From contig NC_068994.1 in NCBI RefSeq assembly GCF_001194135.2, positions 21,344,108 through 21,408,107 on the forward strand: a stretch of 64,000 nucleotides of DNA, read 5' to 3'. A program made the translations under genes and the position numbers. The DNA comes from Octopus bimaculoides. Lineage: Eukaryota. Below the pieces are notes generated by a model, which saw nothing but the letters and a program-made list of their open reading frames with translations, had not been told where the DNA came from and made no database searches. Positions 24,977-63,001 of the stretch are shown here, one piece after another (position 1 is the stretch's first letter; every line of letters starts with the position of its first letter).

Positions 24977-25204
24977 CTAGCACCATCGGAAAGGGACAGC
25001 CCGTGGTCGGTCAGCCCCTTCTTTGACAAGTGGCTTGTGAAACTCTCGGCCAGGCCGTGTGTGAATGGTGGCCCAACAATTCTCACAATAGTACTGCAGA
25101 CAAGTCACATTGGCACAGAAGAAGGGGGCAAATTTTCCCCCACAGCGAGCTCCTTGACACTCATCACACATTTGGTCATCTAAGACGTAAGGCTTCACCT
25201 CGAC
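24977..25204 (-). CDS. CPEB2/3/4 (orb2): CPEB terminal coding exon, ZZ zinc-binding domain, ending FRWC-TAG
   Basis: Acceptor ttgtgttgtag|GTC. Cys/His pattern CDEC..C......C...C..YYC..CW..IH......H. Stop TAG at 24979-24977. Confidence 0.97.
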   Translation of the reverse strand, partial: VEVKPYVLDDQMCDECQGARCGGKFAPFFCANVTCLQYYCENCWATIHTRPGREFHKPLVKEGADRPRAVPFRWC

Positions 25205-27531: not shown

Positions 27532-30500
27532 GCGTGCATACATAACGTAGGAAAATGGATTGAGAGAATCAAGCAGAATTCACAGTATGCAGTCCTGCAA
27601 AGAATCAGCTATCAGTTTACACAGTAATTATATTACAGTGTAGTTTAACTTGCCCATGCAACTGAAAATCCAGGATGCTCCATATACAGTAATACCTAAC
27701 TTTACAAGGACCCACTTTCCAAGACTCTGGGTTGGCAAGTTTTATTTTTCAGCTCACTTTTGTATGGTGAGCTGAAATTTTTCAAGCACAAGATCCAAAT
27801 TTTGAACGAAGTGCAAGTTTCTACTACTATAACAAATGCTTCTGCAGGTTACCAAAAAATTTATAGAGAGCGAAAAAAAGCTTCTAAGCAAGCAACTCTA
27901 GACTTGTTTTTTAAAAAGAAATCTACAAGTCTGGTGATGGCGTGTGCTGGTGTGCATGAGTCTAGTGCGAGTGAAAGTGATTCAGAAAACGGTTATGATA
28001 ATAATATTTTTTATCATAAATGATCTTGACATTCTTTTTATTTTACATAAAATCTTCTTTACATTCTACTGTTGTTTTATTGCCATTTATTTACGTGTAT
28101 TATAAATTTTGTAGGTAAAATATTTTTCTGGGAATGAATTACAAATTATAACATTGCTACTATGAGAAAATATTGCTCTGCTTTATGGGTTTTCGCTTTA
28201 TGAGCAGTGTCCAGGAATAAATTAGCTCACATATTGAGGTGTTACTGGAATATTGTGGATATATTTAGGATTCAACTCTATTACACAATCAAAACCCACT
28301 CTTCTATACATTGTGTGGAAGGGAAAAATTCAAAGTTGGTACAATAATTGAATTTGTATAATTAGATATTTTACTATGTAAAGCAAACAAAACAAAATAT
28401 AGGGTATTTGAACTAAATTTGACAACTTTCACCTCTCCTTTTATTTTCAGGAAGAGCTTGATGTATTGCTGAACAGAAAAAGTTTTGTGAAATTCTGCTA
28501 TGCAGGGCTTCTTAACCTAAAAAGTAAATTTATTTTGCCATTTTTAAGCTGGTAATGTCAACAACATGTTTTAGTAACTGCGTTTGATGTAAGCAAAGCT
28601 TGAATGAGCACGTGTGGTTGAGAAAGACAGAGAACTAAGGGGAGTTAATTCACTGAACAGCAAATATAAACAGTTTTTTTACAACTAACAAAAATCCCAT
28701 AAACCAAAACATCTATTAAAGACAGGTTTAAATTACCAGTGTTCTATGGAAAAGCATATTTCAGTTCATACAGCTGAAAATTTGGTACAACTTTAATCTG
28801 GTGGTGGAGTGACCCAATTTAGAGCTAGCAATATAAGCTTACAATAGAGCTTGCCTTCATAGCCCCATATTTCTATTGTATTATCTTATCTAATATAATA
28901 TTACTACAAACCAATATTATCATATGTGATGCAACTATTTCCTCTCTACTTACATCAGACCTGACTATACTGCAGTTCATAGAAGAAATAACAGCTAAAG
29001 TACAAACAGAAAATTATAATGCAGACCTCTAAGTATGCTGATTACTTTATAACCCTTTCATGTAATAGAAAAGGAGAAAAATGAATATGAACATGTTAAT
29101 ATATAAAAAAAAAATATTTATATTATATACAGATTTATTTATATATTTGCATACATACCAAACACATTTTTATACTTTCAGATCTTGCATACCCAAATAG
29201 AGCAAAAAAGCAATATCAACACTCACCCTCTTGTCAATATCGGCATGTTGCAGTTGAACAAAGCGAGCACTGATTGCAGCAATGTAACTTTGCTGGTTTG
29301 AGAAAGCTACACGGCCAGCTCCTTTAGGGTATTTTAATTCAGGATCAGTGTCAATGCCTGCATAACAAACACCTCCATAAAGACGATCCATGATCAAAGC
29401 TAACTCCACTGAAAAAGAGCAAAGTGAGATTCTCCATAAAACTCAGTCAGATATTCAGAGTAAATCATAACTGTAATAGGATGGTAGGTGGCAGAATCGG
29501 TTGAGTATCAGTTTAAGTCTCTTGTTACAATTAGTTCAAACTCTCTTTATAGTTGATTTTACATCTCATCCAATGAAGAGATGTAATTTCATAACATATG
29601 GGGGTGGTTAAATTAACTGTCCCCTCTCCCAAATTAATCAATTTGTGGCCTTGCACCCATGCCAGAAATCATCATTATCACAATTATCTATTAAGTTCTT
29701 GATGTGTTTTCAATATCTGCCCTTGACTGTGTCAATGCTCTAAGCTTAATACAATTGTCTTTTTTTTAATTAACTTTCTTGTCTATTACTTTTAATTACC
29801 TTCATGGAGTTAACAGAAAGGTAATTAAAGATAGACAAGAAAGTTAATTACCTTCAAAAATGCAGTTGTTTATCATGTTTTGTGTTTATAATAATAATTA
29901 CTGCATATTTCTGCAATTAGTCAACTTATATGGTTCCCTCAATAATGTTAATTACCAAGTATTCAGGGTGACCTGTACATATACAGCCCTAAATTCTATT
30001 TCTATTCATTATAATTCTTGAGGTTATAAGTATTGAAAAGTTTTTCTTGAGAATATTCAATGCTAATGACTTGGTTCTCAAAATAAGATCTATCGAAGTA
30101 CTGTAAGAAAAGTTCAAAACTTAGAAAAATGATAAAGAGTTTGAAGACCAAATTCTCAATTAATAACAAAAGCATGAAGTCTCAGTGCTAAGATATTGGT
30201 TTACTTGATATGTAGGAATTTGATACTCTGTACTTTGCCTTTCATTCTTTTGGGGTCAATAATGTAAGTACCAGTTGATCACTGGGGTAAATGTAATTGA
30301 CTAGCTCATTCCCACAGTAGAAAAGACTATCATGATTCATATACTAGTAGTTCAGTTACTACCACACCTTACATTTCTTCAAAACTTAAAATACTTATAA
30401 TAGTTTGCATAAACAAACTGGTAGACATAACCTCAATACAATCAATATGGATAAATTTTTCATCTTCTACAATTTCAAATTTAAAATATATACTTTTAAT

Positions 30501-33500
30501 ATGTTGAATTAAATCTGTGCTCAGACAGAAAGCAAGCAAGCTAAACAATGAGCTTTGTTTAAGAAGTACAATTCAATGGCTGTGGATAAACCCAGCTTCT
30601 GAGTTTATGGTTAATAGCTCAGAACCATAAACACATATGAACAACCTTACCCTCTTTCTCTCTCTCTCTCTTTTACTTGTTTCAGTCATCCGACTGTGGC
30701 CATGCTGGAGCACCGCCTTTAGTCAAGAAAATCGACCACAGGGCTTATTCTTTGTAAGCCTAGTACTTATTCCATTGGTCTCTTTTTGCCGAACCGCTAA
30801 GTTACGAGGACGTAAACACACCAGCATCGGTTGTCAAGCGATGGAGGGGGGACAAACACAGACACACACACACACACACACACACACANNNNNNNNNNNN
30901 NNNNNNNNNNNNNNNNNNNNNNNNNNNNNNNNNNNNNNNNNNNNNNNNNNNNNNNNNNNNNNNNNNNNNNNNNNNNNNNNNNNNNNNNNNNNNNNNNNNN
31001 NNNNNNNNNNNNNNNNNNNNNNNNNNNNNNNNNNNNNNNNNNNNNNNNNNNNNNNNNNNNNNNNNNNNNNNNNNNNNNNNNNNNNNNNNNNNNNNNNNNN
31101 NNNNNNNNNNNNNNNNNNNNNNNNNNNNNNNNNNNNNNNNNNNNNNNNNNNNNNNNNNNNNNNNNNNNNNNNNNNNNNNNNNNNNNNNNNNNNNNNNNNN
31201 NNNNNNNNNNNNNNNNNNNNNNNNNNNNNNNNNNNNNNNNNNNNNNNNNNNNNNNNNNNNNNNNNNNNNNNNNNNNNNNNNNNNNNNNNNNNNNNNNNNN
31301 NNNNNNNNNNNNNNNNNNNNGCGGGTGACACGTAAAAGCACCCACTACACTCTCTGAGTGGTTGGCGTTAGGAAGGGCATCCAGCTGTAGAAACTCTGCC
31401 AAATTAGATTGGAGCCTGGTGTTGCCATCCGGTTTCACCAGTCCTCAGTCAAATCGTCCAACCCATGCTAGCATGGAAAGCGGACGTTAAACGATGATGA
31501 TGATGATATACGACAGGCTTCTTTCAGTTTCCATCTACCAAATCCACTTGCCCAAGGTGCCACACAGTGGGACTGAACCCGGAACCATGTGGTTGGTAAG
31601 CAAGCTACTTACCACACAGCCACTCGGATAAAGAGAAAGATACTTACATGCTCTTAGTGGTCTTGGAACTCCACCAACAAATATTGTTTTACGCGGATCC
31701 AATGGTTGGCTACCATCCATCACAAAATCTGAATCACTCAAGTTCCATGGTCTAATTTGGACCTAAAAAATAAATAAAAGGTAATGTTTTTAGAAAGTAA
31801 GCATTAACTTCTTTTTATTTTGGAGAGGAAGATGTCAATTTGATATTTATTTTTTTTCGAACTCTGAGAAATAAAAGGTTAATAAATATTTAGTCTGTCA
31901 CTATTTTATAGAAATTAGCTGCCTTTTAAAAGAACCATTTACTTTACAAAATAAAATTTTAAAGAAATTATTAAAAAAAAATTAATCAGAAAACTCTACA
32001 TGTGCAATGGAATTTTCATAGAAATATAATCTTGTAGTTTATTTGAGTCATTGTCTTTTTTTAATTAACTTTCTTGTTTGTTACCTTTAAGTACCTTTTT
32101 GTTTCTAAGAAACAGAAAGGTAATGAAAATGATTTAACAATACAGAACTGGAGAAAAATAAATTTAATGAATAATTTTACTTCAGTAAATTTCAATTGAG
32201 AACTGAAAAAATTGAAACAGTAAACCATAAAACTGTTATAATATATACGTTGTGGTAACAGGGTGGACAGTGATATAGAAATGAAGCCTTAGAAAATATT
32301 TATGTATCCTGTTGTACAATAACAATGTTATATATGCTATAAGAATTCAGTTTCCAACCTAGTCCTGGACCCATTTCCTGTTGTCTCTTTAGGAAACCAA
32401 CTTTTGCTGTACTTACAGGTTTATCTTTCATAGTAGGACTGGACACACACCAGTATAGTTTATCATCATCAGTGATGCAGGCTTCAATCAATGACTGCAC
32501 AGACATTTCATCTTGAAACAGCAGAAAGCAATAGCCTAACAAAGAAAGAGAAAATCAAACAATCTTCAGCCAGTCACTAGTAAACTATATGAACTTATCA
32601 AAATTGTTGAGGTATAAGGTAGGTAATGTTAGGTATTAAATGAGAAGTTGAATGGGTTCTTTTTCAGCTGTGGCCAACAAGTATTTCAAATGATTGGTGA
32701 TGATTGTTAGGATGATGTGTGATGGTTGATGATGATGATTATGGTTATAAAGATAACAACAGCAGCCATATTGCTGAGAATGATGATCAACTTATGATAA
32801 TTTTGATACTGACAATTTTGGGGAAGTTTTGTTCTGACAGACAATTTATAAACAATGTTTTTCTTTTTCCATTTCTACCACATTGCAGGATGTTAACTAA
32901 TTTCATCATTACACTCTTCAACATCTAACAATGAAGTATACTGTCACATTTGGTGTTGAGTAGAGGACCTGACTATGTTTGTTGTAGATGTCTATGTTAC
33001 AAATACCCCAAGAAAAGTAGATCTAAAATTCTTCTCAAAGTCTAATCTAACCAATAGGACTTGAATATATCATCAGGTGTAGGTGTGATGGGCTAAGATA
33101 CTCCTTTCCATTTCCAGTAAGGAAATTCTTTCAATTATCAATTTGTTTTAAGTTAAAAAAGAAGCTAAGATTTCTTTGTGAGCTGAATAGAATAACTTTT
33201 GCATCATTAGATTTCACCATCAACATCATCAACACCACAATTTAACATCTGTTTCTCAAGAGAGGAAACTCATCAAAACAGTACAGATTAAGCAAATTCA
33301 CAAACTGATCTAATTATTTTATCTCAATTTCTTTTGGCCTAAACCTCCTCAACAACTAGCTGTAGAGCTTTAGAAAATTAAAACATTTTCCATCTTTAAC
33401 TGTAGCAAAGTTGTTTAAAGTTAAATATATACTAGATAAAGTGGAAAACATATGTAATTACTATCTCAACACAGAAATATTTGTTTGGTTTGATGGAGAA

Positions 33501-36500
33501 AATTCTATATAAAATTTGAAGTTCAAATAACAGCTTACCTTTAGGTGGAAAATAAGACTTGCTCTCAGCTTTGTGAGGCCAATCAACCACTAAAGGACCA
33601 AAGCGTCGGAATGCTGATGTAATCTCCTCTGAAACAAAAAGGAATTGGAGATCAAAATTAATTTCATCTTCAAATTAGCTGGTACTCTAAAAAGTAAGGT
33701 GAATTACAGACAGTGAATGGATAAAGGTGTTTGTTCATTGGTTATTGGTTTACAATTTGTAACTGAATCTGTGATCATATTTTCTTAATTCTGAAGTTTT
33801 AACATGAGAATGCTGGGTAACATGTTAAATAACCTGTTTTCATTTAAAGGTATTGTTTGGAACTGAATAGAAGCAATAAAGAATTTAAGCTGACAAACTG
33901 TGTTTGACTGATACTGGAAAGATACACATACTGAAAGCTAAAGTGTTTGTTACCCACAGGTTGGTTTGAACCCCTACATGTTGGTGAGCCTCCACTGAAA
34001 AGCCTTTTCCAGTACTCTGTGTAATCTGTGAGAAAGTGACGTCGGGAAGAGAGGAGTAATACATCAAAAGTTCCAATTCATACTAGTAAAAAAATGAGCA
34101 GTACATGTTACTTTAAAAACTGGCACTCCAGTGGTTATGACAACAAAGGTTCCAGTTGATCTGATCAACAGAACAGCCTGTTCTTGAAATTAATGTGCAA
34201 GTGGCCGAGAACTCTACAGATACAGATACCCTTAACATAGTTCTCAGGGAAAATCAGCATGACACAGAGTGTGATAAGGCTGACCCTTTGAATTACAGGT
34301 ACTACTCATTTTTGCCAGCTGAGTGGATTGGAGCAATATGAAATAAAGTGTCTTGCTCAAGGATACATGTTGCTGGGAATTGAACTCATGACCTTATGAT
34401 CATGAGCTGAATACCCTAACCACTAAGCCACATGACTTCAAGCCTTACAAAAATATATAGAATGTGTCTGAAGCTTAATTTTTTAAAATATCATTTTTAA
34501 TACAATACAATTGCATGTCAGTAACTACTTTGACTTCATTTAGGTGGATTTGTTACAAAATTTTTCATAAAAGATTTCTAAAAAATATTTTCATGGTTTC
34601 TTAAAGTGAATGGTGAAAATAAACTTTGGTATAATCAGTTATAATAAATGTTGAACCTTCATCAATATCTGGGGGTAAACCTCCAACAAAGACTTTCCGT
34701 GAAAAACGCTCCAACCTCTCCTGAGCAGTTGGAGGATTGGGGGAACCACGGGCAGGAGAACTCAGACTGGGAACAGTTTGGTCCAGACTTGTATCGTCAA
34801 GTAGATGATTATCTTCATTGAAACCAAATGGGGACTTTCCTGAAATAAAGAGAAATATTGTTTCAATTGCTAAACAAAAAAATGACATACAATAGTGACA
34901 ACAATTAACATATCAGATTGTAATAACATTATTTACATCTTCCGGTCATTTCCTCAGTGAGGCCCAATATCTGAAGATCCTTTCTCACTACTTTGTCCCA
35001 CATCTTCTTGGGTCTACCCCCTCCACTGGTAACCTCTACAATTAGAGCTCAGCACTTCTTTAAACAGCTGTCATCATCCATACGCATCACATGACCAAAC
35101 CAGCAGTCTTCTCTCTTGTACACAACATCTGATGCCTCTTATACCCAGTTTTCCTCTTAAATCATTTACACTCTGTTGTGCATGCACACTGAAATTATCC
35201 ATCCAGTGGAGCATGCTAGCTTCATTTCTTTCAAGCCTTCACAAGTCCTCTGTAGTCAAAGTCCATGTTTCACAGCTATGTAGCATGGCTATACATACAC
35301 AGGCATCATACATTATGCCTTTCCCTCTGAGGAAGAGGCCTTTAGCTACCAACAAAAGCAGAAGCTCTCTGAACTTTGTCCAGCCAGTTCTTATCCTAAC
35401 AACTACACTTTCAGAACTTCTTCCACCACTGCTAATTTGGTTTCCTTGGTAACAGAAGCTATCCACAACTTCCAATGATTCCTACCACCAGCATTTGAAG
35501 GAGCCAGTTGTCTGTGCCTTTTTTAGTGCTTATTGTACCTGCACATTTGCCACACACAAAGACTATATTCTCCATTAACCTTTCTTTGATAGCATTGCAC
35601 CTCTTATGTGTCCAAAGCTCGCACTGAGTAGAACGCATGGAGTTTCTCCCAACATCCTTCTTACATATCAAGCAGGGTCATCTCCCAGAAGGGACTTGTG
35701 ATTTTCGTTAACAATTTTAACTTTGAAGCTTACTTTGAAAATCCTTATTGGACTAATTAACTTCCATTAACTTAAGTCCATTAACCCAAAAATTTCATAA
35801 AAACCAGTGAACATTTAAAAGTTTTTATTGTTTACAAATTGTCTTAGCATATTCAATATTGTACGCATCATTCTTTCAACCCTGATATAATACCACTTAT
35901 TATTATAAATAACTTGTAGGACCTCGTTTGACCCTGCCTGGATTTGAAACCAAACCCACCCGCTTGTTGCTTGCAAAGACAGCAGGAAATTTCTTTGCCT
36001 GCCAAGAGGTAACAATGATTGATGTGTTTCCATTTGATCTGTGACCTCGCTGAGGTGGATTTCAACTGAGAAAATATTGACTTTCATAAAATGGAAAAAG
36101 TTAGTAAATATTTTGATGTGAATGCAAATATTTCGGTGTGAACACAAATAACTGTTATGTGGTAGCAGGGCATGCTAGAAATAACAGCCAAATCTTTCCC
36201 TTTCTGGAAAAAAGGAGCCATTTACATGTGATTTTGATGTCATATTTATTGAAAGCATGCAAAATAACCTGGAAAAGAAAAAAAGACCCGCGAAACAAAA
36301 CTCCCTTGGTGAGAAACTTCGAAGCGCCTACCACCCCTCCCACCTTTCTTTTCTGGAAAAAAGTGGCTTGCGGCAGGTTTGGAGGTCAGATACATTGAAT
36401 GCACCTGAAAAAACTGTGGAAAAAAATTATTCCACACCAAAGTACAAAATATTTACCGAAAGAATAAAATCTTGTACCGATTATACTTGTATGTTAATTA

Positions 36501-47700: not shown

Positions 47701-50700
47701 TTTTCAATCTCAGTATTTAAGCTATGCATAGTACTGCTGCATACATTTCTACAACACCATTTTCTTTACGTGATATAAAGGCAGAAATAGATCTGCTTTC
47801 AACTCAGTTGCATGCCTGTGTTTCACTTTTTTTTTTGTATGTTTTGCTACATAAAGGTCACCAACTGCCTACTCTGAGTAATTACTGATGGCATATGCCT
47901 GAAATATATGCTTTGCTGATGAGGTCATAATAAAAGTGAATTATAGAAGTCTAAACCTGTGCTTAGTGAAATAATTAAAATAATATCAGTCAGTGATTAA
48001 TATCGTTTATTCTTCAGTGCATAATTATTTCTATTTAGTTTTTAATGTTACCCTGCATTAAACATCCTCACCATAGCTTAATTCTTGTTCTTAAAAAGTA
48101 GTAGTTTTGTACCCATTATATTTCAAACAAGACACCAAATGTACCTTGACCAATTTTTCTTTGCAATAGAACAGGTTAACTAATTCCTGTAGGGGTGGAG
48201 TAAGGCTCATAACGCTTGCTAGACTATGGGCAAAGCAAGATTGACTCTGTAAACTATTTTAAGAACACATTTTAATTAGTTAGACAACACTCAAATATAA
48301 CATTTCTGGTTAAGTTCCAAAAAAGAGTGTATGTAACCATAAAAAATGTTTTACTTGTTCATAAACACAATCAAAATCATAAGTATTAATCAATGACACT
48401 TATCACTTCGAAGAGAATTGTAACATTAATTCCTAAGAGATTAAGAATGTCATTGAAACAGTCTCAGTTGAGAATCAAAACCAAATTACAAACTTAGTTT
48501 ATCAAAATTTTATCAACAGTTTTAAAGGACAAACTATAATCGATCATACTGAATTTAATTCTGTGCTGTCTATTAATAAAATTGTTTGTTGAGCCTATAA
48601 AGGACATGTGTTTGTGTATTAAATTTCTTAGTGATCAATATGTATTGTTAACTTTGGAAGTAGAAAGACAAGAAAAAATACAGCATATATATATATATAT
48701 ANNNNNNNNNNNNNNNNNNNNNNNNNNNNNNNNNNNNNNNNNNNNNNNNNNNNNNNNNNNNNNNNNNNNNNNNNNNNNNNNNNNNNNNNNNNNNNNNNNN
48801 NNNNNNNNNNNNNNNNNNNNNNNNNNNNNTATAAAGAGAGAGAGAGAGAATACAAGCAATTTGCACATTACACGACCCAATTTCATTTGTAAGATTAATA
48901 ACTTTGAAGAAGTTAGGAACATGACAACATGAATTTTATTCCTACTGTATGCTTCATTCTTACACATTTAGGATTCATGCAATAAAAAAACTTAAAGAAG
49001 AATGGTTCCTGTTTGGCTGACTTGCTCTTAACACACTAAAGACAAGTTTCAGTACAGTGTAATCAACCCAATGGTTCACAAAAACACTTATGCAAATAGT
49101 TCAAAACACTAAATATTTAGGTAGACAAGAGACAAATATATCTCTGGATAGAATGTTAAGAGTAATTGCCAGTTAACTTTTTATGTGGCTAACATCTATT
49201 TTCAAACAAGCTAAATTAAAACAGAGTTAACTATTTTGTCTAAAATATGGCAAAAGACCTGAAATCAACTGTAAATTCAGTAACTCAAGAACCACTATCT
49301 GTGAAATAAACATTAAAATCTCATCTCCAAGGCCACTGCAACCTCAAACTATATATACATATAAAGAAAATCTGTGGCATCTCTCCTTCGTTTGCCAGTC
49401 TCTAGTTTTCTTTTTCTTCTTTTTTAAATAATTGAACTATTTTTACTTTAACTTAGTTAACTTTGGGTTGAAAATACAAGAAATATACATCTAGATGTTC
49501 CTTTTTAATACTAATCTTTTTAAAAAAAGAAAAGAAAAGAAAACTAAACTTCACATTCTATGTTTTAGCATATTCTTAAATATGAACACTAAAATCAAAC
49601 AATGTCAAAGTAGAATAGAAAAATAAAACAGATTTCAACATCAGTGTTCAGGAATTGTAAGTGTAAAGCAACACACACTGTTGTCACTAGTCACTCTCTT
49701 AGTAACAATCTAGTTAATATAAAGATGGTGAATTACCCAAGTAATACATCATTTCTCATGTAACTGAGACAGAGATAATGCCTGACACTTTCTGATGAGA
49801 GGTATCCATCAACATGTGATTAGCTCTAGTAATAAAATAAGAGCAATATCAATTTCCTTTGAGAAGATTTCTGCTTGCACTACAAGTTAATGAAACATAC
49901 ATCAACTGTTCATGGAGGTGAATTGTACTTCTTTATAATACTTATTAGGTTGACTAAAACTTAAGATAATTGACCTTTTAGAAAGAAAGGCCCAAATAAG
50001 GCAGAAGGAAAACCTTATTTTGCAGGTATTCGATATATGACTGGAGATCAAATGAAACAGAATTGCTTGAAAGAGATGAACAAGAATTTTAACACCTCAA
50101 GAATTTTGTAAAATACAACAAAAGACAACCAGCCAATCTTTATCTCTGAGACTATTACTTCAGTGTCAAAACTGATCAACATTAAGGCAATTTTTACCTA
50201 AGTTTCATTTAATGATGACTGAGAGAATTTAAATAGAACCTTAGCAAAAGACAAATGGGAAAATCAATGCCAAACTGTCAGGTGAAAGATTTCAATAACT
50301 GATGTATCTAAGATTTAAATGCTTTCAATCCTTTCCAAGGAAAATATTAAATAGATCTTTCTCCAGATATGATTTGAAGTGCTTTATCACTCGAGTAATT
50401 CTTTCCCAGCCAGATCTAACAAAGAACAGAAAACTTCCAAAGTCATGCGTAAAACATTAACAACAAACATGAACCAACAAAAATCCAGAAATAATAGAGT
50501 GGAGGAAAGAGAGAGGAGGAAAGAGAAAGAAAGAGAAATTGGATAACAAAAATATTACAACATTTTAAAAATTCATATTTAGAATGAAAACAGAAAAACA
50601 ACCAGTGTGAAAGCAAAGGAGCTGAAGGGACAGATAACCAAAACAGGGCTCTAGAATGGTAGGGATATAAATAAGAATATAAAAGGAATGTGTGAAAAAA

Positions 50701-53700
50701 TTGTGAAAATACCTCTTCTTCGTCCGTAAGCACGTGCTGCAGTAAGCCAAGTAGAAATTGTAAAACTTTAGTGATTTAACACTGCACATATGAACACATA
50801 CACAAAAACCACACTATATGTATGTGCATGTGTGTAATTAACAGGTGGAAAAACAAAGAATATGTAAAAATTGTAGACTATATACATGAAATTAAAACAT
50901 TAGAAGAGTCACCACTTTCCTTTCCCAATGCAAAAAGAAAAAAAAAATGTTGTGCATGTCTTCCTGTATACTCTGCATATGGTGCACATTAAGCTTAAGA
51001 AATGGCAAATTAATAAACACTGAAGAAATCTTAAGATTCCCACCTGTTAACATCAATCTTCAAGAATCCTCTAGTTTCTAGACCTGCTTTGAAAGCAGAT
51101 CAGCCAAAACCTGCATGCGTTATAAACTTAAAAACTAACTAATGAAAAGAAAGTAATCAGTTGTATGATTTGAAACTATTTCTCTGCAATTACTAGGGAA
51201 TGTTAAGAAATGTTATAAAAATCACTTTAATACTTTTTAATGTCATCTAACTTCAAAGATATTTAAATTCTGTCAACATCATGGCATAGCCATGACGAAA
51301 AGAAGTTTGAATCATAACCATGTAGTTCTGAATTTGGTCCCATGGTGTGGCACCTTGTAAGTAGGATTAGGCAAACAGAAACTGTATGCAACCTCTTGCA
51401 GGTATATAGGTTTAGCTGTGTGTGTGTCTGGTGTCTTGAGTTGCATTCCTCAACCATTCAATAAAAAAAATAATCACTAAAATAAGTACCAGACTAAAAT
51501 AATTACTGAAGTCAATATGATAAACTTAAACCCTTGAGCATGGCAGAAGAGCATGACCCCAGTGCAATACCTAAAACTAGTAAAAGAATAAAAATCCAAC
51601 GTATGCACTGTTTTTCAATGTTCATTAATCACTAAATAAAACTATTCAGTTTTGTGAATATTTAAATGACACATATCACACACTGCTGCGTATGCATCAA
51701 TTCAAACAGACTCGAAAAAGAGCTGCTCCTTGAATAAACTTAAATACATAAGGGAAGGAAGTGAAGTAGTAAAAATGAAAAGTATAAGATTCTCTCCAAA
51801 TTTTTCTTATCTTTTGTGCTTGTATAGTCATGCTGAAGTATAAACAAAAAAAAATTCTATCTAAATAACAGATTCTATATAAAAAGAAAAAAGAAAAGGA
51901 AGATGTTAGTGGTATTATAAAGCAACTAGAGAATTGATACACAAATACAACTGGAAAAAGTTTTGGTAACAGTTTCAAATTGGGAAAAAAAATCTATCAT
52001 TATCTCAAACTGAAGATGATGAAACCAAGGAGAAAATAACTCTTTTTGCAATCAATGACTAGATAAATAGGGAAAATAATTAAGATAATAAATAATCAAT
52101 AAAACCAGTGTTTTCAAAAGTACTAAGACTGAGCAAAGCAGGTTTGCATAGACAATGTTATACTAACAAAGTCTAACATGACTGAAGTGTATCAATGCTG
52201 CCCCATCAGGAATAATCACTGAGATGCTCAAAATATCTGGCAAAGTAGGATCCAAGAGACTCATCCAAATAGTTAATCAAGTAATACAGCAAGGTGTCAT
52301 GCCCAATGATGTAGTAGTATCAATGACACTGCTACACAATGATGGTGCTGTATCATTATAAACTGCTACAACGAAATGCTTTACAGCAAGGAAATTATAG
52401 AGGTATCAAGTTGTTAGACCTACATATGAAGGTCTTGAAGAGAGACATTGCACAGTTGATTAAAGATAGAATTAGCTCAGATGAAATACAAAAGTATTTT
52501 TCTTAGAGTAAACCACTTTACCAAGAATTTAGACTAGAAGAGTGTTTTTGATAGGGTACAAAACTCAGCTATGTACATATATGCAGTTAGTATCACAGGA
52601 ATCAACAATGAATTCCTGCCTTCACACTAAATTCAATGAAATAATTCCAGAGATGGGAGCAAAACCTAGAATTAAGAGGACTCAAAAAATTTAGCAAAGA
52701 CTAAGATGTAAGTAGAAAGAAGACAGGGTCCCGATATAAAAACAACAACAAGGAAAAAAAAAACAATTAAAAACGCAACTAGCCTTGCTTGATATGCTTT
52801 ACCCAGTGTAAGATATGGACACATAAAAGGTGTAGTGGAATCAGGCAGGCTAAGAATGAAAGGCAGCTTTGTATGTAGTAGATGCACAGAAGCAATATGT
52901 TTGAAGAGTGTAATGATTATAGACTCTAATATGCCCAGTGGTTCACTAAAGTAGTTGAGACTTTCTGCTACTACAGTGACAGAATTAGAGAGTCAATGGG
53001 TGTTCAGAATGTATAGCATGAGTGCTGAGCACTCAAAGTAAATTGAACCAGTGGAAGAGGGAGACCAAGGAAGACTCAGGACAACATGGTGTAAACTGAT
53101 CTGAAGATGCTGCATATCTTATAGAAAATGATAAAGGACTGTACTGATTGGCAATAGACAGTGATCAAGAAAACCTGACTATCTATGGCAAAACATACCC
53201 TGGCATGAAGGTAGTATTTAGAGATGAGATATTTTTGTACCTTAATAAAACCAGAATCTGTTTTCCCCTCACTTTACACTTCTCCCCCACCTCTCTTTTA
53301 CCTACTACTTACTCTTGTCACCCACAGCACACATTCTCTCATATACCCACCACCTGTCTTCACTTCATCCTCATCAGTTTGATTTCTTTGTTCTTCACAA
53401 GCATATGTAAAAGAATCTGCATCCAACCATCCTGATTCCTCCATTCAATACACTATAATTTCACCCTTTTTGTACTATCAGTCATCAGTCACTCTCCTCT
53501 AGGCCAAATCTGCTGCCACCCATCACCTGTTCTTACCTTTATCTCACCATCCACCCTTACCTTTGTCTACTTCTGTTATTGCCAATCACTCCCTTCTTGA
53601 CTAAACCTCAAAGAAACCTACTGCTTACATCATATTCCTGTTCCTCCCAGCTATGCTTTCTAGCCCAACAAATGCTATTGCTCTCTCTCTCTCTCTCTCT

Positions 53701-55909: not shown

Positions 55910-55944
<35 letters not shown>

Positions 55945-58900: not shown

Positions 58901-59563
58901 TAAGGGCAATACAAATAGCCTCACTGGCCCCAAGGACTTCTGGAATGCCATCAACAACCATAAATGCAGAGGAACAGTAACTACCACACTCTATTTCACT
59001 TTGCCTGCCTCTACTTTAGCCAGTCCCAGAATCATGGAGTATAGTGGGAAGAGTATAATATGCACAGGATATCATGCTGCACCCCATACAATTCATCACT
59101 GAATGTCAGTTTGCAGTTCAGTCCTCAACTGGCAGATATACAATCTAACTGGGAAGATAGATGCTTGAGTTGTACCTTGTCATTTGGATGACTTTCTGCA
59201 TGCTATTAGTACTGCTTGATTAGGACTAACCAAGGTACATAACAACAACAATATATAGCCTCAAACCAATATCACCAACATCACTAATACAATTACCACC
59301 CATATGAATAATATAATATTGTTGACTTTAGCTCTTAAATTCTAGAGTAAATAACGTGCTGTGCTGTGAGAAAGTTGGCAAATTTGCTTAGAAATTTCTA
59401 AAAATGGTAATATGGTGTAAAATGATACTTAAAGGAGAAACAGGACAAACATAATAGCCTCACCTTTGTAGTGCTCATGAGACTCAGTGTTACTCCTCAT
59501 TAAATCCAACAGCCGGCTCTCTAAACCTGTGAAGCGCATGCTGTCAAAATTATTTCCTCGGTC
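24977..59563 (-). CDS. CPEB2/3/4 (orb2): CPEB2/3/4-subfamily cytoplasmic polyadenylation element-binding protein, 5'-partial. join of 59464-59563, 50713-50736 (optional), 34657-34839, 33539-33628, 32417-32535, 31648-31762, 29227-29408, 24977-25204
   Basis: The spliced product reads ...ERFSRKVFVGGLPPDIDEEEITSAFRRFGPLVVDWPHKAESKSYFPPKGYCFLLF...VQIRPWNLSDSDFVMDGSQPLDPRKTIFVGGVPRPLRALELALIMDRLYGGVCYAGIDTDPELKYPKGAGRVAF...CDECQGARCGGKFAPFFCANVTCLQYYCENCWATIH...FRWC*. This is the diagnostic near-invariant RRM1-RRM2-ZZ region of CPEB2-4/Orb2, not CPEB1/Orb. All introns are GT-AG with matching phases. 1041 nt with the microexon, 1017 nt without. Confidence 0.97.
26140..26335 (+). mobile_element. SINE/RTE-type 3' tail
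   Basis: gagtggttggcattaggaagggcatctagccatagaaaccatgcc...gtcgaaccgtccaacc; the same motif occurs at 31345-31470. Confidence 0.75.
26337..26902 (-). mobile_element. RTE-clade LINE, APE endonuclease fragment
   Basis: AYAP...KDWFYDTL...VAGDFNRHV...HGGYRFGSHNEEGTRLLEFCDANDLMICNTNF...SQIDCIL...HRLVV are catalytic APE motifs of RTE/BovB-type elements. Confidence 0.92.
27190..27490 (-). mobile_element. tRNA-derived SINE (family with gtgttcttgagcaa central domain)
   Basis: ttttgctcaagaacacaac...catgatcccatgatcgtgaatgcaacatcgtaaccaccaggccatg is the reverse complement of the family seen at 63111. Confidence 0.6.
27687..28247 (+). mobile_element. pogo/Tigger-like non-autonomous DNA transposon remnant
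   Basis: Left end (TA)CAGTAATACCT; right end reverse complement CAGTAACACCT. Internal peptide YQKIYRERKKASKQATLDLFFKK resembles Tigger transposase C-termini. The right-hand TA is not preserved. Confidence 0.6.
29227..29408 (-). CDS. CPEB2/3/4 (orb2): CPEB exon, 182 nt, phase 1-0: LELALIMDRLYGGVCYAGIDTDPELKYPKGAGRVAFSNQQSYIAAISARFVQLQHADIDKR
   Basis: Acceptor gctctttttcag|TG; donor AGG|gtgagt. Encodes RRM2. Confidence 0.97.
29754..29850. repeat. AT-rich fold-back element; related copy at 32050-32125
   Basis: 29767-29786 is the exact reverse complement of 29831-29850, and 29791-29802 of 29818-29829; 15-nt loop. Confidence 0.85.
30650..31625 (-). mobile_element. Young tRNA-derived SINE (head 31625-31508, tail 30888-30650), interrupted by an opposite-strand tail element (31321-31507) and a gap
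   Basis: Head gagtggctgtgtggtaagtagcttgcttaccaaccacatggttccgggttcagtccc has A/B-box-like motifs. Tail tgtgtctgtgtttgtccc...aagtactaggcttacaaagaataag...ggtgctccagcatggcc. An intact relative lies at 40421-40806. Confidence 0.85.
31648..31762 (-). CDS. CPEB2/3/4 (orb2): CPEB exon, 115 nt, phase 0-1: VQIRPWNLSDSDFVMDGSQPLDPRKTIFVGGVPRPLRA
   Basis: Acceptor ttttttag|GTC; donor GCAT|gtaagt. Contains RRM2 RNP2. Confidence 0.97.
32417..32535 (-). CDS. CPEB2/3/4 (orb2): CPEB exon, 119 nt, phase 1-0: GYCFLLFQDEMSVQSLIEACITDDDKLYWCVSSPTMKDKP
   Basis: Acceptor ctttctttgttag|GC; donor CCT|gtaagt. Contains RRM1 RNP1. Confidence 0.96.
33539..33628 (-). CDS. CPEB2/3/4 (orb2): CPEB exon, 90 nt, phase 1-1: EEITSAFRRFGPLVVDWPHKAESKSYFPPK
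   Basis: Not in the ORF track; read manually. Acceptor tttttgtttcag|AG; donor AAAG|gtaagc. Confidence 0.96.
34090..34440 (-). mobile_element. tRNA-derived SINE
   Basis: gtgtcttgctcaagga...ggaattgaactcatgacc...accctaaccactaagccac is a reverse-complemented tRNA-like head plus central domain. Confidence 0.7.
34657..34839 (-). CDS. CPEB2/3/4 (orb2): CPEB exon, 183 nt, phase 1-1: linker plus start of RRM1 (GKSPFGFNED...ERFSRKVFVGGLPPDIDE)
   Basis: Acceptor ctctttatttcag|GA; donor GAAG|gttcaa (weak). Contains the RNP2 motif VFVGGL. Confidence 0.93.
34945..35690 (-). mobile_element. RTE-clade LINE, decayed region downstream of the RT
   Basis: VDSFCYQGNQISSGGRSSESVVVRIRTGWTKFRELL...MLHSCETW...LERNEASML. 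Confidence 0.85.
38240..39560 (-). mobile_element. RTE/BovB-type LINE reverse transcriptase fragment
   Basis: PILQEEVEEAVHMLKVGKSPGVDNIPSEFLK and FFRTTVGVKQGCILSPVLFNIFLE; frameshifted. Confidence 0.9.
40421..40806 (-). mobile_element. Near full-length tRNA-derived SINE
   Basis: Head ggcatagctgtgtggtaagaagtttgcttcccaaccacatggatccaggttcagtcac, then microsatellite and 3' tail; collinear with 30650-31625. Confidence 0.85.
41104..41520 (+). mobile_element. RTE-clade LINE 3' fragment
   Basis: ggcaaagttcagagagcta...agagtgaaaggcagattgtatgatacctgtgtac is homologous to 43780-44150 and, inverted, to 35000-35450. Confidence 0.75.
42420..44600 (+). mobile_element. RTE-clade LINE, long decayed ORF2 plus 3' UTR
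   Basis: Collinear remnants: gatgcagtttggttttgtgccagga (MQFGFVPG), VGVHQGSVISPFLFIIV, LLYADEL, GSETWA, then a pyrimidine-rich 3' UTR and ggttgacattagaaagggc tail. Confidence 0.88.
44648..44707. repeat. (GA)n microsatellite
   Basis: Directly visible. Confidence 0.98.
45560..46140 (-). mobile_element. Two full and one partial tandem copies of the ~200-bp SINE
   Basis: ggcacaa(t/g)g starts at about 45581, 45796 and 46086; gaccctgaaaggatgaaaagcaaagtcgac at about 45890. Confidence 0.7.
46640..46950. repeat. Degenerate (GCA/GTA/ACA)n trinucleotide repeat
   Basis: agcagcaacaacagg...gtagtagcaacagtagtagcaac...; explains the low-complexity ORFs on both strands. Confidence 0.85.
50713..50736 (-). CDS. 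CPEB2/3/4 (orb2): 24-nt CPEB microexon, phase 1-1: (A)RAYGRRR(G)
   Basis: Minus strand reads tttctacttggcttactgcag|CACGTGCTTACGGACGAAGAAGAG|gtattt. Frame-preserving between the 59464 and 34839 exon ends. 7/8 identical to vertebrate CPEB4 microexon ARTYGRRR (recalled). Confidence 0.88.
52130..54010 (+). mobile_element. RTE-clade LINE, heavily decayed, with 3' UTR and tail
   Basis: ggaaattatagaggtatcaagttgttagac (NYRGIKLL) and 3' tail cagtaaagtggttgatgatagaaagggcatcc; same architecture as 42420-44600. Confidence 0.65.
54590..55170 (-). mobile_element. Possible Tc1/mariner transposase remnant
   Basis: LYLSENLRQLTSVWNTLFACIEEAWEE resembles Tc1 C-terminal helices. No intact DDE triad seen. Confidence 0.35.
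56700..59100 (+). mobile_element. AC-rich decayed non-LTR retrotransposon ORF2; clade not assigned
   Basis: Near 58310-58480: (LF)NLYIHNCPTSPQNTRTTAYRDDSRL...QLYLNHLETWL, a degenerate RT YADD region. Confidence 0.6.
59464..59563 (-). CDS. CPEB2/3/4 (orb2): CPEB exon equivalent to vertebrate exon 2, 100 nt, phase 0-1: DRGNNFDSMRFTGLESRLLDLMRSNTESHEHYK-G
   Basis: Acceptor ctttactttcag|GAC; donor AAAG|gtgagg. The peptide resembles the vertebrate CPEB2-4 segment DRSR..DSLNMHSLENSLIDIMRAE (recalled). Confidence 0.85.
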
Positions 59564-61910: not shown

Positions 61911-63001
61911 CTGTATTGTCATCAATATGTTAAATGAAATCAATATTTTGCCTTGCTATAAACATAAAACTGGTGAAAGCAAAGAAAATAATCCAAAGCT
62001 TTCCCAATTCAAAGAACCACAATTTACACATTTGTGCATAACAGAAAGAAACTTGAAATGAAAACTTCTATGTAATTTTGATATAATAGATATACTGTAA
62101 AATTTCTCATGAATATTTCCAGTGTCTCAAAGAATTAAGAATTTTTAATTAAAAACAATTAAATGAGAGGCACAAGAGAGTATTAAGTGAAATAACAAGA
62201 GAAAGGGATGTTGAAAAATTAAAGTGATGAGGATAAGAGTGAGAGAGAAAATGTTATAAGGATAGAGAAAGTGAAAAACTAATTGGAATAGAGGTAATAG
62301 ATAAAGGAGAGAGAGATAGACAGACAGGAGAAAGATATTTGAAAAATTATCTCACAGTGTATTAAAAAATGCTATCATGAAGTGAAATAAAATTAGTTTT
62401 CTGATAGAATTGTGCAGTTAAAATCTTCAATAATAAAAATTCCTGTAAATCACATTTTGATAAAAATATATTAAAGTTGAAATTTAAAAAAATTTTCTAA
62501 ATGATGTAGACTTTAATAATTGCTACTTTTAGTAAAAGTTACATACTCATAGCTAATTAATAATTATCTTTTTCCAATGTGCAATAAATCTACTTACCAC
62601 AGGAAGATACTCCACATGACTTGCGTCAGTCCAAAGCACCACATTGTCTGACACCATCTCTCTAGGAATGTTCTGCCAGAAAAAGGAAATCAGTGAAAGG
62701 AAGTAACAAAACAGGCCAAAAGAGGTGAACAGTGTAGACATTGGGTACTTTTGATAAACAGAAGTAATCATAAAGATCATTAGAATTAAAAGATGTAGAA
62801 AGGTAAAGAATAAGGTAGAAAGACATGAAAAGACGAAAAAATATACAAAAATAGTACAGATAAGTAAAAGTTATAGCTAAATTCAGTTATAGCTAAACAG
62901 AGTTTTATAGAAAGATAAACAGATAGACATGAATAGGGATAGATCCAAGCAGAAATAGCAATGAACAGACACACATATATATATATATATTTATTTATTT
63001 T

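What the first reader, a model, noticed from the sequence alone, without database searches (positions are those of the whole stretch)
50713..50736. Invertebrate counterpart of the vertebrate neuronal CPEB4 24-nt microexon (ARAYGRRR vs ARTYGRRR)
Seen: ...gcttactgcag|CACGTGCTTACGGACGAAGAAGAG|gtattt.... It is exactly 24 nt, AG/GT-bounded and phase 1-1, isolated between introns of 8727 and 15873 nt. Splicing gives HYK-ARAYGRRR-GKSPF. Established, from memory: vertebrate CPEB2-4 have an 8-aa alternative exon at this position. In CPEB4 it is neuron-specific, its reduced inclusion is linked to idiopathic autism, and its Arg residues interact with His clusters to keep condensates reversible. The upstream exon here ends in SHEHYK. 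Inference: agreement of length, phase, position and 7/8 residues points to homology, so this switch would predate the protostome-deuterostome split. Gene predictors commonly miss such exons. I cannot verify whether it has already been reported in molluscs.
Basis: partly seen in the sequence, partly recalled or inferred. Interest (0 to 1): 0.93.

Follow-up and report, generated by a model that had tools for sequence, protein, structure and literature searches.

The report
Octopus CPEB 24-nt microexon, already annotated
The 24-base segment is a real alternatively spliced mini-exon of the octopus CPEB2-4/Orb2 gene and a true counterpart of the autism-linked human CPEB4 microexon, but it and its skipped isoform are already in public octopus gene models and in those of many other invertebrates, so only the evolutionary reading may be new.

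Summary
Observation confirmed. On the minus strand, cag|CACGTGCTTACGGACGAAGAAGAG|gtattt (50736-50713) splices in phase 1-1 between exons ending ...SHEHYK and starting GKSPFGF, giving HYK-ARAYGRRR-GKSPF. It is the only one of 127,954 octapeptide windows above 4/8 identity to human ARTYGRRR.

The gene is the octopus CPEB2-4/Orb2 orthologue. My 346-aa translation is 100% contained in Octopus bimaculoides XP_052828706.1 (isoform X1), O. sinensis X1 and an O. vulgaris model. RefSeq X2 differs from X1 only by loss of ARAYGRRR, so the cassette is already annotated.

Homology with vertebrate CPEB2/3/4 exon 4 (me4, 'B-region') is strongly supported. The same 8-aa cassette sits at the same junction in brachiopod, nemertean, chelicerate, crustacean, locust, hemichordate and amphioxus models (amphioxus ARTYGRRR, identical to human). 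I also found it de novo in five unannotated invertebrate genomic loci, with synonymous codon turnover.

Not supported: a His-cluster partner (octopus N-terminal domain has at most 4 His per 24 aa, human 9), and the idea that predictors missed the exon. Untested: neural specificity; TGCAG acceptor and weak GTATTT donor fit eMIC/SRRM-type regulation. I found no paper stating the bilaterian conservation. Moderate interest.

The parts
50713..50736 (-). 24-nt cassette microexon encoding ARAYGRRR (phase 1-1); residues 679-686 of O. bimaculoides isoform X1
   Evidence: Identical to XP_052828706.1 and absent from X2. Unique 7/8 match to human me4.
50737..50776 (-). 3' splice region of the microexon: interrupted polypyrimidine tract and TGC at -5..-3 (cttacTGCAG)
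   Evidence: TGCAG is kept in 4 of 6 lineages against a 1.8% background. A UGC near the 3'ss is the eMIC-exon signature (PMC8797185 section 10).
50705..50712 (-). Weak, conserved 5' splice site GTATTTTC
   Evidence: GTATTT occurs in 5 of 6 lineages against a 0.95% background. Five of the six constitutive-exon donors mapped in this gene are GTRAGT (exon B's is GTTCAA).
59464..59563 (-). Upstream constitutive exon (exon A): DRGNNFDSMRFTGLESRLLDLMRSNTESHEHYK, residues 646-678. Counterpart of the end of vertebrate exon 2 (SLESSLIDIMR...K).
34657..34839 (-). Downstream exon (exon B): GKSPFGFNEDNHLLDD...ERFSRKVFVGGLPPDIDE, the linker plus the start of RRM1. Counterpart of vertebrate exon 5 (GQSSLFPMEDGFLDD...).
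62598..62672 (-). Further upstream coding exon (NIPREMVSDNVVLWTDASHVEYLPV, residues 621-645)
33539..33628 (-). RRM1 exon
32417..32535 (-). RRM1 exon
31648..31762 (-). RRM1/RRM2 exon
29227..29408 (-). RRM2 exon
24977..25204 (-). Last coding exon (ZZ domain, ...FRWC, stop TAG)
   Evidence: Pfam CEBP_ZZ.

Best explanation
Shown: window 50736-50713 (minus strand) is a genuine cassette microexon of the single octopus CPEB2-4/Orb2-type gene. It is orthologous to exon 4 (me4, the 'B-region') of vertebrate CPEB2, CPEB3 and CPEB4. When included, it inserts the arginine-rich octapeptide ARAYGRRR into the disordered linker about 60 residues before RRM1, directly in front of a conserved G-[KRQ]-S motif. 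When skipped, the frame is kept. Public models hold both forms.

Inferred mechanism: inclusion adds four arginines, which changes the charge and interaction valence of the disordered region that drives CPEB condensation. It also completes a basophilic-kinase consensus (R-x-R-x-x-S: RRRGKS) on the serine that follows, as shown for the same segment of mouse CPEB3.

Inferred regulation: the exon has a weak acceptor with UGC next to the AG and a conserved weak GUAUUU donor. This is the architecture of exons that need an SRRM/eMIC-type activator, so neuron-enriched inclusion is the most likely pattern, but it was not measured.

The human me4-His-cluster interaction is probably a later vertebrate elaboration, because octopus and other protostome proteins that carry the exon lack a His cluster.
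For: Gene identity: Pfam RRM_7 (1e-38) and CEBP_ZZ (1e-21). The 346-aa window translation is contained with 0 mismatches in O. bimaculoides X1, O. sinensis X1 and O. vulgaris CAI9733032.1.

Cassette status: X1 vs X2 differ only by ARAYGRRR in two octopus species. The same 8-aa-only differences occur in Lingula (ARPYGRRR), Ptychodera and Glandiceps (TRTYGRRR), Tachypleus (ARGFGRRR), spiders (ARSYGRRR), Schistocerca (ARGFGRRR), Penaeus (GRGYTRRR) and Branchiostoma (ARTYGRRR).

Transcript evidence: an intron-less mRNA contig that includes the exon (L011, ARPYGRRR), and Logan transcripts from another cephalopod-like species that skip it (P0306, P0431).

Independent genomic evidence: AG-24nt-GT exons reading AR-x-[YFL]-G-[RK]3 lie upstream of exon B in five further unannotated lineages. 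There were no hits on the control strands. Arg codons vary (CGT/CGG/AGG/AGA/CGC) while the peptide is kept.

Vertebrate side: me4 is 24 nt, holds 4 Arg, binds HClust and depends on SRRM4 (PMC11711090). The 51-nt and 24-nt exons are consecutive and alternative (PMC12628316). The B-region is required for PKA/CaMKII phosphorylation of S419/S420 (PMC4767366).

Cis-signals.
Against: I had no RNA-seq junction counts or tissue data, so alternative use in octopus rests on RefSeq models and on transcripts from relatives. Neural enrichment is inference only. The serine after the exon is followed by proline in octopus (GKSPF). This is unfavourable for PKA/CaMKII-type kinases and makes the phospho-switch less certain than in vertebrates (GRSS/GQSS). 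Crustaceans have GKGGF with no serine there. The octopus N-terminal domain has no His cluster, so the best-studied vertebrate mechanism cannot simply be transferred. Gastropod, bivalve, chiton and echinoderm models lack the exon, so it may have been lost, or may be unannotated, in several lineages.
Confidence: 0.9

Rival explanations
1. The exon acts in octopus as in human neurons. Its arginines bind a histidine cluster in the N-terminal domain and keep CPEB condensates reversible.
For: The peptide is 7/8 identical to human me4 and has the same four Arg. The human mechanism is documented (PMC11711090).
Against: The octopus X1 N-terminal domain (733 aa) is 3.0% His with at most 4 His per 24 aa, against 9 per 24 in the human HClust. 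It is Q-rich instead (80 Q). Locust, prawn and mite orthologues that carry the exon have 2-4 His per 24 aa. 'SHEHYK' contributes only two histidines.
Confidence: 0.15
2. The main ancestral role is a phospho-switch. The exon supplies the upstream arginines of a basophilic kinase site on the serine that starts the next exon, as in the CPEB3 'B-region'.
For: PMC4767366: peptides lacking the B-region were not phosphorylated above the S419A/S420A control in the quantitative PKA and CaMKII assays. RRRG[KRQ]S is kept in octopus, Lingula, chelicerates, locust, hemichordates and vertebrates.
Against: In most protostomes the serine is followed by Pro (GKSPF), which disfavours PKA/CaMKII/AKT-type kinases. 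Crustaceans (GKGGF) and amphioxus (RRR|DNYDG) lack the serine yet keep the exon.
Confidence: 0.3
3. The exon is constitutive in octopus, and the skipped isoform (X2) is a modelling artefact. There is no switch.
For: I could not see read support. Microexon skipping can be an aligner artefact.
Against: Skipped and included forms are both modelled in two octopus species and in more than 10 other phyla or classes. Assembled Logan transcripts from another cephalopod-like species skip it (P0306, P0431). The splice sites are weak and conserved.
Confidence: 0.08
4. Convergence: protostome and deuterostome lineages independently exonised a similar Arg-rich 24-nt sequence in the same intron.
For: Recurrent evolution of neural exons at equivalent positions is reported to be common (bioRxiv 10.64898/2026.09.05.749416).
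Against: The length, phase, junction residues (K|...|G) and motif A-R-x-aromatic-G-R-R-R are the same across Mollusca, Brachiopoda, Nemertea, Chelicerata, Pancrustacea, Hemichordata, Cephalochordata and Vertebrata. In arthropods the preceding 17-aa alternative exon is also present, as in vertebrates.
Confidence: 0.03

Closest known systems
Human/mouse CPEB4 microexon 4 (me4), neuron-specific, SRRM4-dependent, mis-spliced in idiopathic autism (PMC11711090; PMC12628316)
   Same: 24 nt. Same junction (exon ending ...K, next exon starting G-x-S). In-frame cassette. Peptide 7/8 identical (ARAYGRRR vs ARTYGRRR) with four arginines. Located in the disordered linker before RRM1.
   Different: Octopus has no 51-nt exon-3 counterpart between exon A and the microexon. 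It has no His cluster in the N-terminal domain. The serine after the exon is followed by proline. Neural specificity and SRRM dependence were not measured.
CPEB3 'B-region' (exon 7) and the CPEB2 equivalent: 8-aa alternative segment forming part of a PKA/CaMKII/S6K consensus (PMC4767366)
   Same: Same orthologous exon family ([A/T/S]RSYGRRR in CPEB2/3). Basic residues lie upstream of a serine at the start of the next exon.
   Different: Vertebrates have RRRGRSS. Octopus has RRRGKSP, so kinase preference may differ. Phosphorylation is untested.
Annotated invertebrate orthologous cassettes, e.g. O. bimaculoides XP_052828706.1/XP_052828707.1, Lingula XP_013420563.1/XP_013420564.1, Schistocerca gregaria XP_049864695.1/XP_049864696.1, Ptychodera XP_070539951.1/XP_070539952.1, Branchiostoma X1/X5
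   Same: For octopus it is the identical exon. For the others the length, position and motif are the same, and included and skipped isoforms come in pairs.
   Different: These are automated gene models. I found no paper that describes them or links them to me4.
Bilaterian-ancestral neural microexons in APBB1/2/3 (6 nt) and MADD (9 nt), the only two confidently inferred in a 20-species study that included O. bimaculoides (bioRxiv 10.64898/2026.09.05.749416)
   Same: A very short in-frame cassette in a neuronal regulator, present on both sides of the protostome-deuterostome divide.
   Different: The CPEB exon is not listed there. Its tissue specificity outside vertebrates is unknown, and the holometabolous insect models retrieved lack it.

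Membership tests
CPEB2-4 / Orb2 subfamily gene | Two C-terminal RRMs of the CPEB type plus a CPEB ZZ zinc-binding domain | tested here: met
   Pfam RRM_7 1.1e-38, CEBP_ZZ 9.9e-22, RRM_1 4e-13. The exons are 78-95% identical to human CPEB4.
CPEB2-4 / Orb2 subfamily gene | Identity with an annotated orthologue | tested here: met
   346/346 residues are identical to O. bimaculoides XP_052828706.1, O. sinensis XP_029645168.1 and O. vulgaris CAI9733032.1.
CPEB2-4 exon 4 (me4 / B-region) microexon | 24-nt in-frame exon whose skipping keeps the frame | tested here: met
CPEB2-4 exon 4 (me4 / B-region) microexon | Position: between the exon ending ...[LI]MR...K and the exon starting G-[RKQ]-S...LLDDG...SRKVFVGG | tested here: met
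   Compared with the human N-terminal domain sequence and the vertebrate models.
CPEB2-4 exon 4 (me4 / B-region) microexon | Peptide x-R-x-[YF]-G-R-R-R | tested here: met
   ARAYGRRR. It is the unique 7/8 match in the window.
CPEB2-4 exon 4 (me4 / B-region) microexon | Alternative inclusion (both isoforms exist) | tested here: met
   RefSeq X1/X2 in two octopus species differ only by the exon. This is annotation-level evidence, since reads were not seen. Relatives have transcripts that include it (L011) and that skip it (P0306).
CPEB2-4 exon 4 (me4 / B-region) microexon | Preceded by a second alternative exon of about 51 nt (vertebrate exon 3) | tested here: not met
   No candidate in 59463-50737, and octopus models have none. 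It is present in arthropods (GFINCNTNALQSLAQLH). A 290-nt N-gap (54255-54544) leaves a small blind spot.
CPEB2-4 exon 4 (me4 / B-region) microexon | Neuron-specific inclusion | not testable with these tools
   No tissue RNA-seq was available.
CPEB4 me4-HClust condensate-stabilising mechanism | Histidine cluster in the N-terminal domain as the binding partner of the exon's arginines | tested here: not met
   Octopus N-terminal domain: at most 4 His per 24 aa, 3.0% His. Human: 9 per 24, 5.9%.
CPEB3 B-region phospho-switch | Basic residues from the exon placed at -3 and -5 of a serine at the start of the next exon | tested here: inconclusive
   RRRGKS fits R-x-R-x-x-S, but the +1 proline is atypical for PKA/CaMKII. 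No kinase data.
eMIC/SRRM-dependent neural microexon | Length <=27 nt, weak 3'ss with UGC close to the AG, weak 5'ss | tested here: met
   cttacTGCAG acceptor and GTATTT donor, both conserved across lineages well above background. Criteria from PMC8797185.
eMIC/SRRM-dependent neural microexon | Inclusion depends on Srrm234 eMIC activity | not testable with these tools
   Needs knock-down or over-expression experiments.

The most novel reading that the evidence does not exclude
The autism-linked CPEB4 microexon is a bilaterian-ancestral cassette over 550 million years old. If it proves neural-enriched in octopus and other protostomes, it would be a third deeply ancestral neural microexon beside those in APBB and MADD. 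Because octopus and arthropod proteins keep the exon without any histidine cluster, its original job would be something other than the Arg-His condensate buffering described in humans, perhaps a charge or phospho-switch in the linker. The vertebrate mechanism would then be a later add-on. I found no paper that states either point.
Probability: 0.4. Interest if true: 0.65.

Novelty: already known. Interest (0 to 1): 0.38.

Why it matters
The exon itself is not a discovery. It and its skipped form are in RefSeq for this very gene. The value lies in the comparative picture. A microexon whose mis-splicing is linked to autism and schizophrenia in humans is conserved in length, phase, position and sequence across at least eight animal phyla or subphyla. 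It also persists in lineages that lack the histidine cluster thought to be its functional partner. That makes the ancestral function of me4 directly testable in tractable invertebrates such as octopus, amphioxus, locust and spiders. It would also add a candidate to a very short list of bilaterian-ancestral microexons, if tissue data show neural regulation.

Tried and rejected
(1) The first protein search, with the 102-aa junction peptide, returned mostly single-exon ORF calls from genomic contigs. It was useful only as a route to loci.

(2) Exon A was not found within 10 kb in any fetched locus. The absence of a candidate in L001, L003, L006 and L007, even under relaxed criteria, is therefore uninformative and was not counted as loss.

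(3) The look-up of the Dreissena partial model failed. Its odd K-ARNFRQLL-AGKV segment remains unexplained, and RefSeq Dreissena X2 simply skips.

(4) The search for an exon-3 (51-nt) counterpart in the octopus intron found nothing: tblastn with five exon-3 peptides plus enumeration of all open AG-(45..63 nt)-GT candidates.

(5) His-cluster hypothesis: tested on the real octopus N-terminal domain and on other invertebrates, and rejected.

(6) Literature: searches for CPEB/orb2 with microexon plus bilaterian, invertebrates or octopus found no description of the invertebrate exon. PMC8797185 and the 2026 preprint do not mention CPEB or orb2. No supplements were held. Parras 2018 and Torres-Mendez 2019 were not available, so prior mention there cannot be excluded.

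(7) The species could not be narrowed further. The protein is identical in O. bimaculoides, O. sinensis and O. vulgaris over the region in the window.
Full report
OBSERVATION

On the minus strand the window reads ...ttggcttactgcag|CACGTGCTTACGGACGAAGAAGAG|gtattttcac at 50736-50713. The upstream exon (59563-59464) ends TCT CAT GAG CAC TAC AAA G|gtgagg. The downstream exon (34839-34657) starts cag|GA AAG TCC CCA TTT GGT. Splicing the three gives ...LMRSNTESHEHYK-ARAYGRRR-GKSPFGFNEDNHLLDD...ERFSRKVFVGGLPPDIDE. Skipping the 24 nt keeps the frame.

The match is not chance. Of 182 AG-N24-GT sites on the gene strand, this is the only one above 4/8 matches. Of all 127,954 octapeptide windows in six frames, nothing else exceeds 4/8 identity to the human peptide.

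THE GENE AND THE ORGANISM

tblastn and splice-site inspection give nine coding exons in the window, all with AG/GT boundaries:
- 62672-62598
- 59563-59464
- 50736-50713
- 34839-34657
- 33628-33539
- 32535-32417
- 31762-31648
- 29408-29227
- 25204-24977

The 346-aa product from exon A onward has Pfam RRM_7, RRM_1 and CEBP_ZZ. It is contained with zero mismatches in three public models: Octopus bimaculoides XP_052828706.1 ('CPEB3 isoform X1', 991 aa), O. sinensis XP_029645168.1 and O. vulgaris CAI9733032.1. The window is therefore an Octopus CPEB2-4/Orb2 locus. The large N-terminal exon(s) lie outside it.

ALREADY ANNOTATED

RefSeq isoform X2 of O. bimaculoides (XP_052828707.1, 983 aa) and of O. 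sinensis (XP_029645170.1) differ from X1 by one event only, deletion of ARAYGRRR at residues 679-686. EukProt (listed as a source) carries the same O. bimaculoides pair under the older accessions XP_014781584.1 and XP_014781586.1, so the cassette has been public for years.

HOMOLOGY WITH VERTEBRATE me4

The human neuronal CPEB4 N-terminal domain printed in bioRxiv 10.1101/2023.03.19.532587 reads ...SLESSLIDIMRAENDTIK|ARTYGRRR|GQSSLFPMEDGFLDDG, and its delta-4 form reads DTIK|GQSS. Both flanks align with octopus (GLESRLLDLMR...HYK | GKSPFGFNEDNHLLDD). Other sources agree:
- PMC11711090: me4 is 24 nt, covers residues 403-410, contributes 4 Arg, interacts with a His cluster (229-252) and depends on SRRM4.
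- PMC12628316: it follows a 51-nt alternative exon 3.
- Vertebrate CPEB2 and CPEB3 models carry [A/T/S]RSYGRRR at the same place.

The distribution outside vertebrates is wide. Paired included and skipped models that differ only by the octapeptide exist in the following:
- Lingula anatina: ARPYGRRR
- Horseshoe crab: ARGFGRRR
- Several spiders: ARSYGRRR
- Schistocerca gregaria: ARGFGRRR
- Penaeus: GRGYTRRR (Macrobrachium models carry GRGYNRRR, but their skipped forms also lack the following GK)
- The hemichordates Ptychodera and Glandiceps: TRTYGRRR
- Three Branchiostoma species: ARTYGRRR, identical to human

Nemerteans have xRGYGKRQ and a mite has ..NLGRRR. In arthropods the exon is preceded by a 17-aa alternative exon (GFINCNTNALQSLAQLH). 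Penaeus isoforms X1, X3 and X5 reproduce the vertebrate full-length, delta-4 and delta-3-delta-4 set.

INDEPENDENT GENOMIC EVIDENCE

I fetched 10-kb flanks around exon-B homologues from unannotated ENA assemblies and scanned them for AG-24nt-GT in phase 1. Hits occurred only on the gene strand and only upstream of exon B:

- L002: ARTFGRRR
- L004 and L005: ARQFGKRK
- L008: ARVLGRRR
- L009: ARPFGRKR
- L010: ARFYGRRR

There were no hits on the control strands. Codons turn over while the peptide is kept. The second-position Arg, for example, is CGT, CGG, AGG, AGA and CGC in different lineages. This is the pattern of purifying selection on a coding exon.

An intron-less JGI mRNA contig (L011), 82% identical to the octopus protein, reads straight through K-ARPYGRRR-GK. 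Logan transcripts from another cephalopod-like species skip the exon (P0306, P0431). Convergent origin is therefore very unlikely. The cassette dates at least to the protostome-deuterostome ancestor.

REGULATION (INFERRED)

The acceptor has an interrupted pyrimidine tract with TGC at -5..-3, and the donor is GTATTT. TGCAG is kept in 4 of 6 lineages (background 1.8%) and GTATTT in 5 of 6 (background 0.95%), although the surrounding intron is not alignable. Five of the six constitutive-exon donors mapped in the same gene are GTRAGT; exon B's is GTTCAA. PMC8797185 describes weak 3'ss, UGC close to the 3'ss and, in flies, weak 5'ss as the signature of eMIC-dependent exons. This fits SRRM/eMIC-type, neuron-biased inclusion, but no expression data were available and I mark it as inference.

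FUNCTION (INFERRED)

The human explanation, me4 arginines competing with His-cluster self-interaction, does not transfer directly. The octopus N-terminal domain (733 aa) is Q-rich (80 Q). It is only 3.0% His, with at most 4 His in any 24 residues, against 9 in human. Locust, prawn and mite proteins that carry the exon have 2-4.

A second documented role is that the same segment of CPEB3 (the 'B-region') is required for PKA/CaMKII phosphorylation of the serines that follow (PMC4767366). Octopus RRRGKS fits R-x-R-x-x-S, but the serine is followed by proline, and crustaceans and amphioxus lack the serine.

My best reading is that the conserved property is the compact Arg-rich, aromatic-containing patch itself. 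It would tune the charge and valence of the disordered linker next to RRM1, with phospho-regulation and His-cluster buffering as lineage-specific layers.

NOVELTY

The exon, its skipping and its presence in many invertebrates are in public annotation, so the feature is already known. I found no paper that states that me4 is conserved outside vertebrates. A September 2026 20-species study that includes O. bimaculoides confidently infers only two bilaterian-ancestral neural exons, in APBB1/2/3 and MADD, under deliberately strict criteria. The most interesting open points are whether inclusion is neural in protostomes, and what the exon does in proteins without a His cluster.

VERDICT

The His-cluster and 'overlooked exon' parts are not supported, and the neural switch is untested. 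This is a correct rediscovery of an annotated cassette, with a moderately interesting comparative angle.

Noticed in passing
window 62598-62672 (-): An additional upstream coding exon of the same gene lies in the window. It is 75 nt, phase 0-0, and encodes NIPREMVSDNVVLWTDASHVEYLPV (residues 621-645 of O. bimaculoides X1).
   Followed up: yes
P0244/P0130/P0241 (Schistocerca), P0270/P0204/P0271 (Penaeus); no counterpart in window 50737-59463: Arthropod orthologues have a 17-aa alternative exon (GFINCNTNALQSLAQLH) directly before the 8-aa exon. This mirrors the vertebrate 51-nt exon 3 plus 24-nt exon 4, so the paired-cassette architecture may itself be ancestral. Octopus shows no such exon.
   Followed up: partly
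P0310 residues 1-733 (outside the window): The octopus CPEB N-terminal domain is long, Ser/Asn/Gln-rich and has poly-Q runs (80 Q), reminiscent of the Orb2/ApCPEB prion-like domains. It has no His cluster.
   Followed up: partly
P0123-P0127, P0283-P0299, P0303-P0317 (gastropod, bivalve and chiton models); P0017 Dreissena KAH3802917.1: All retrieved gastropod, bivalve and chiton models lack the microexon. One Dreissena GenBank model has an odd K-ARNFRQLL-AGKV insert at the same junction. This could mean loss, strong divergence or a missed exon in these molluscs.
   Followed up: no
P0152, P0280-P0282, P0351, P0353, P0380 (echinoderms); P0354 (sponge Ephydatia): Echinoderm models show no ARxYGRRR cassette, although hemichordates and amphioxus have it. 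The sponge orthologue has no comparable linker region. Cnidarians were not sampled.
   Followed up: no
window 34651-34656 (-): The donor of exon B, the exon after the microexon, is a weak, non-consensus GTTCAA, unlike the GTRAGT donors of the other constitutive exons.
   Followed up: no
window 54255-54544, 48702-48829, 45824-45833, 37265-37951 and ten further runs: The window has 3538 N in 14 assembly gaps. Four of them lie in the two introns flanking the microexon, so small features there could be hidden.
   Followed up: no
L004:2259 and L005:4344: Two contigs from one ENA sample carry an identical microexon and flanks, but at 7.7 and 5.6 kb from exon B. They are probably haplotigs that differ by an intronic indel or transposon.
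   Followed up: no
P0204 vs P0268, P0271 vs P0272 (Penaeus); P0251 vs P0252 (Macrobrachium): Crustacean isoforms also differ by presence or absence of 'GK' at the start of exon B. This looks like tandem (NAGNAG-like or 6-nt) alternative acceptor use next to the microexon.
   Followed up: no
L006:1-2352, L007:2228-3280: The introns upstream of exon B in two invertebrate loci contain retroelement ORFs (integrase zinc-finger domains (Integrase_H2C2, zf-H2C2) and RVT_1), which helps explain the large and variable intron sizes.
   Followed up: no
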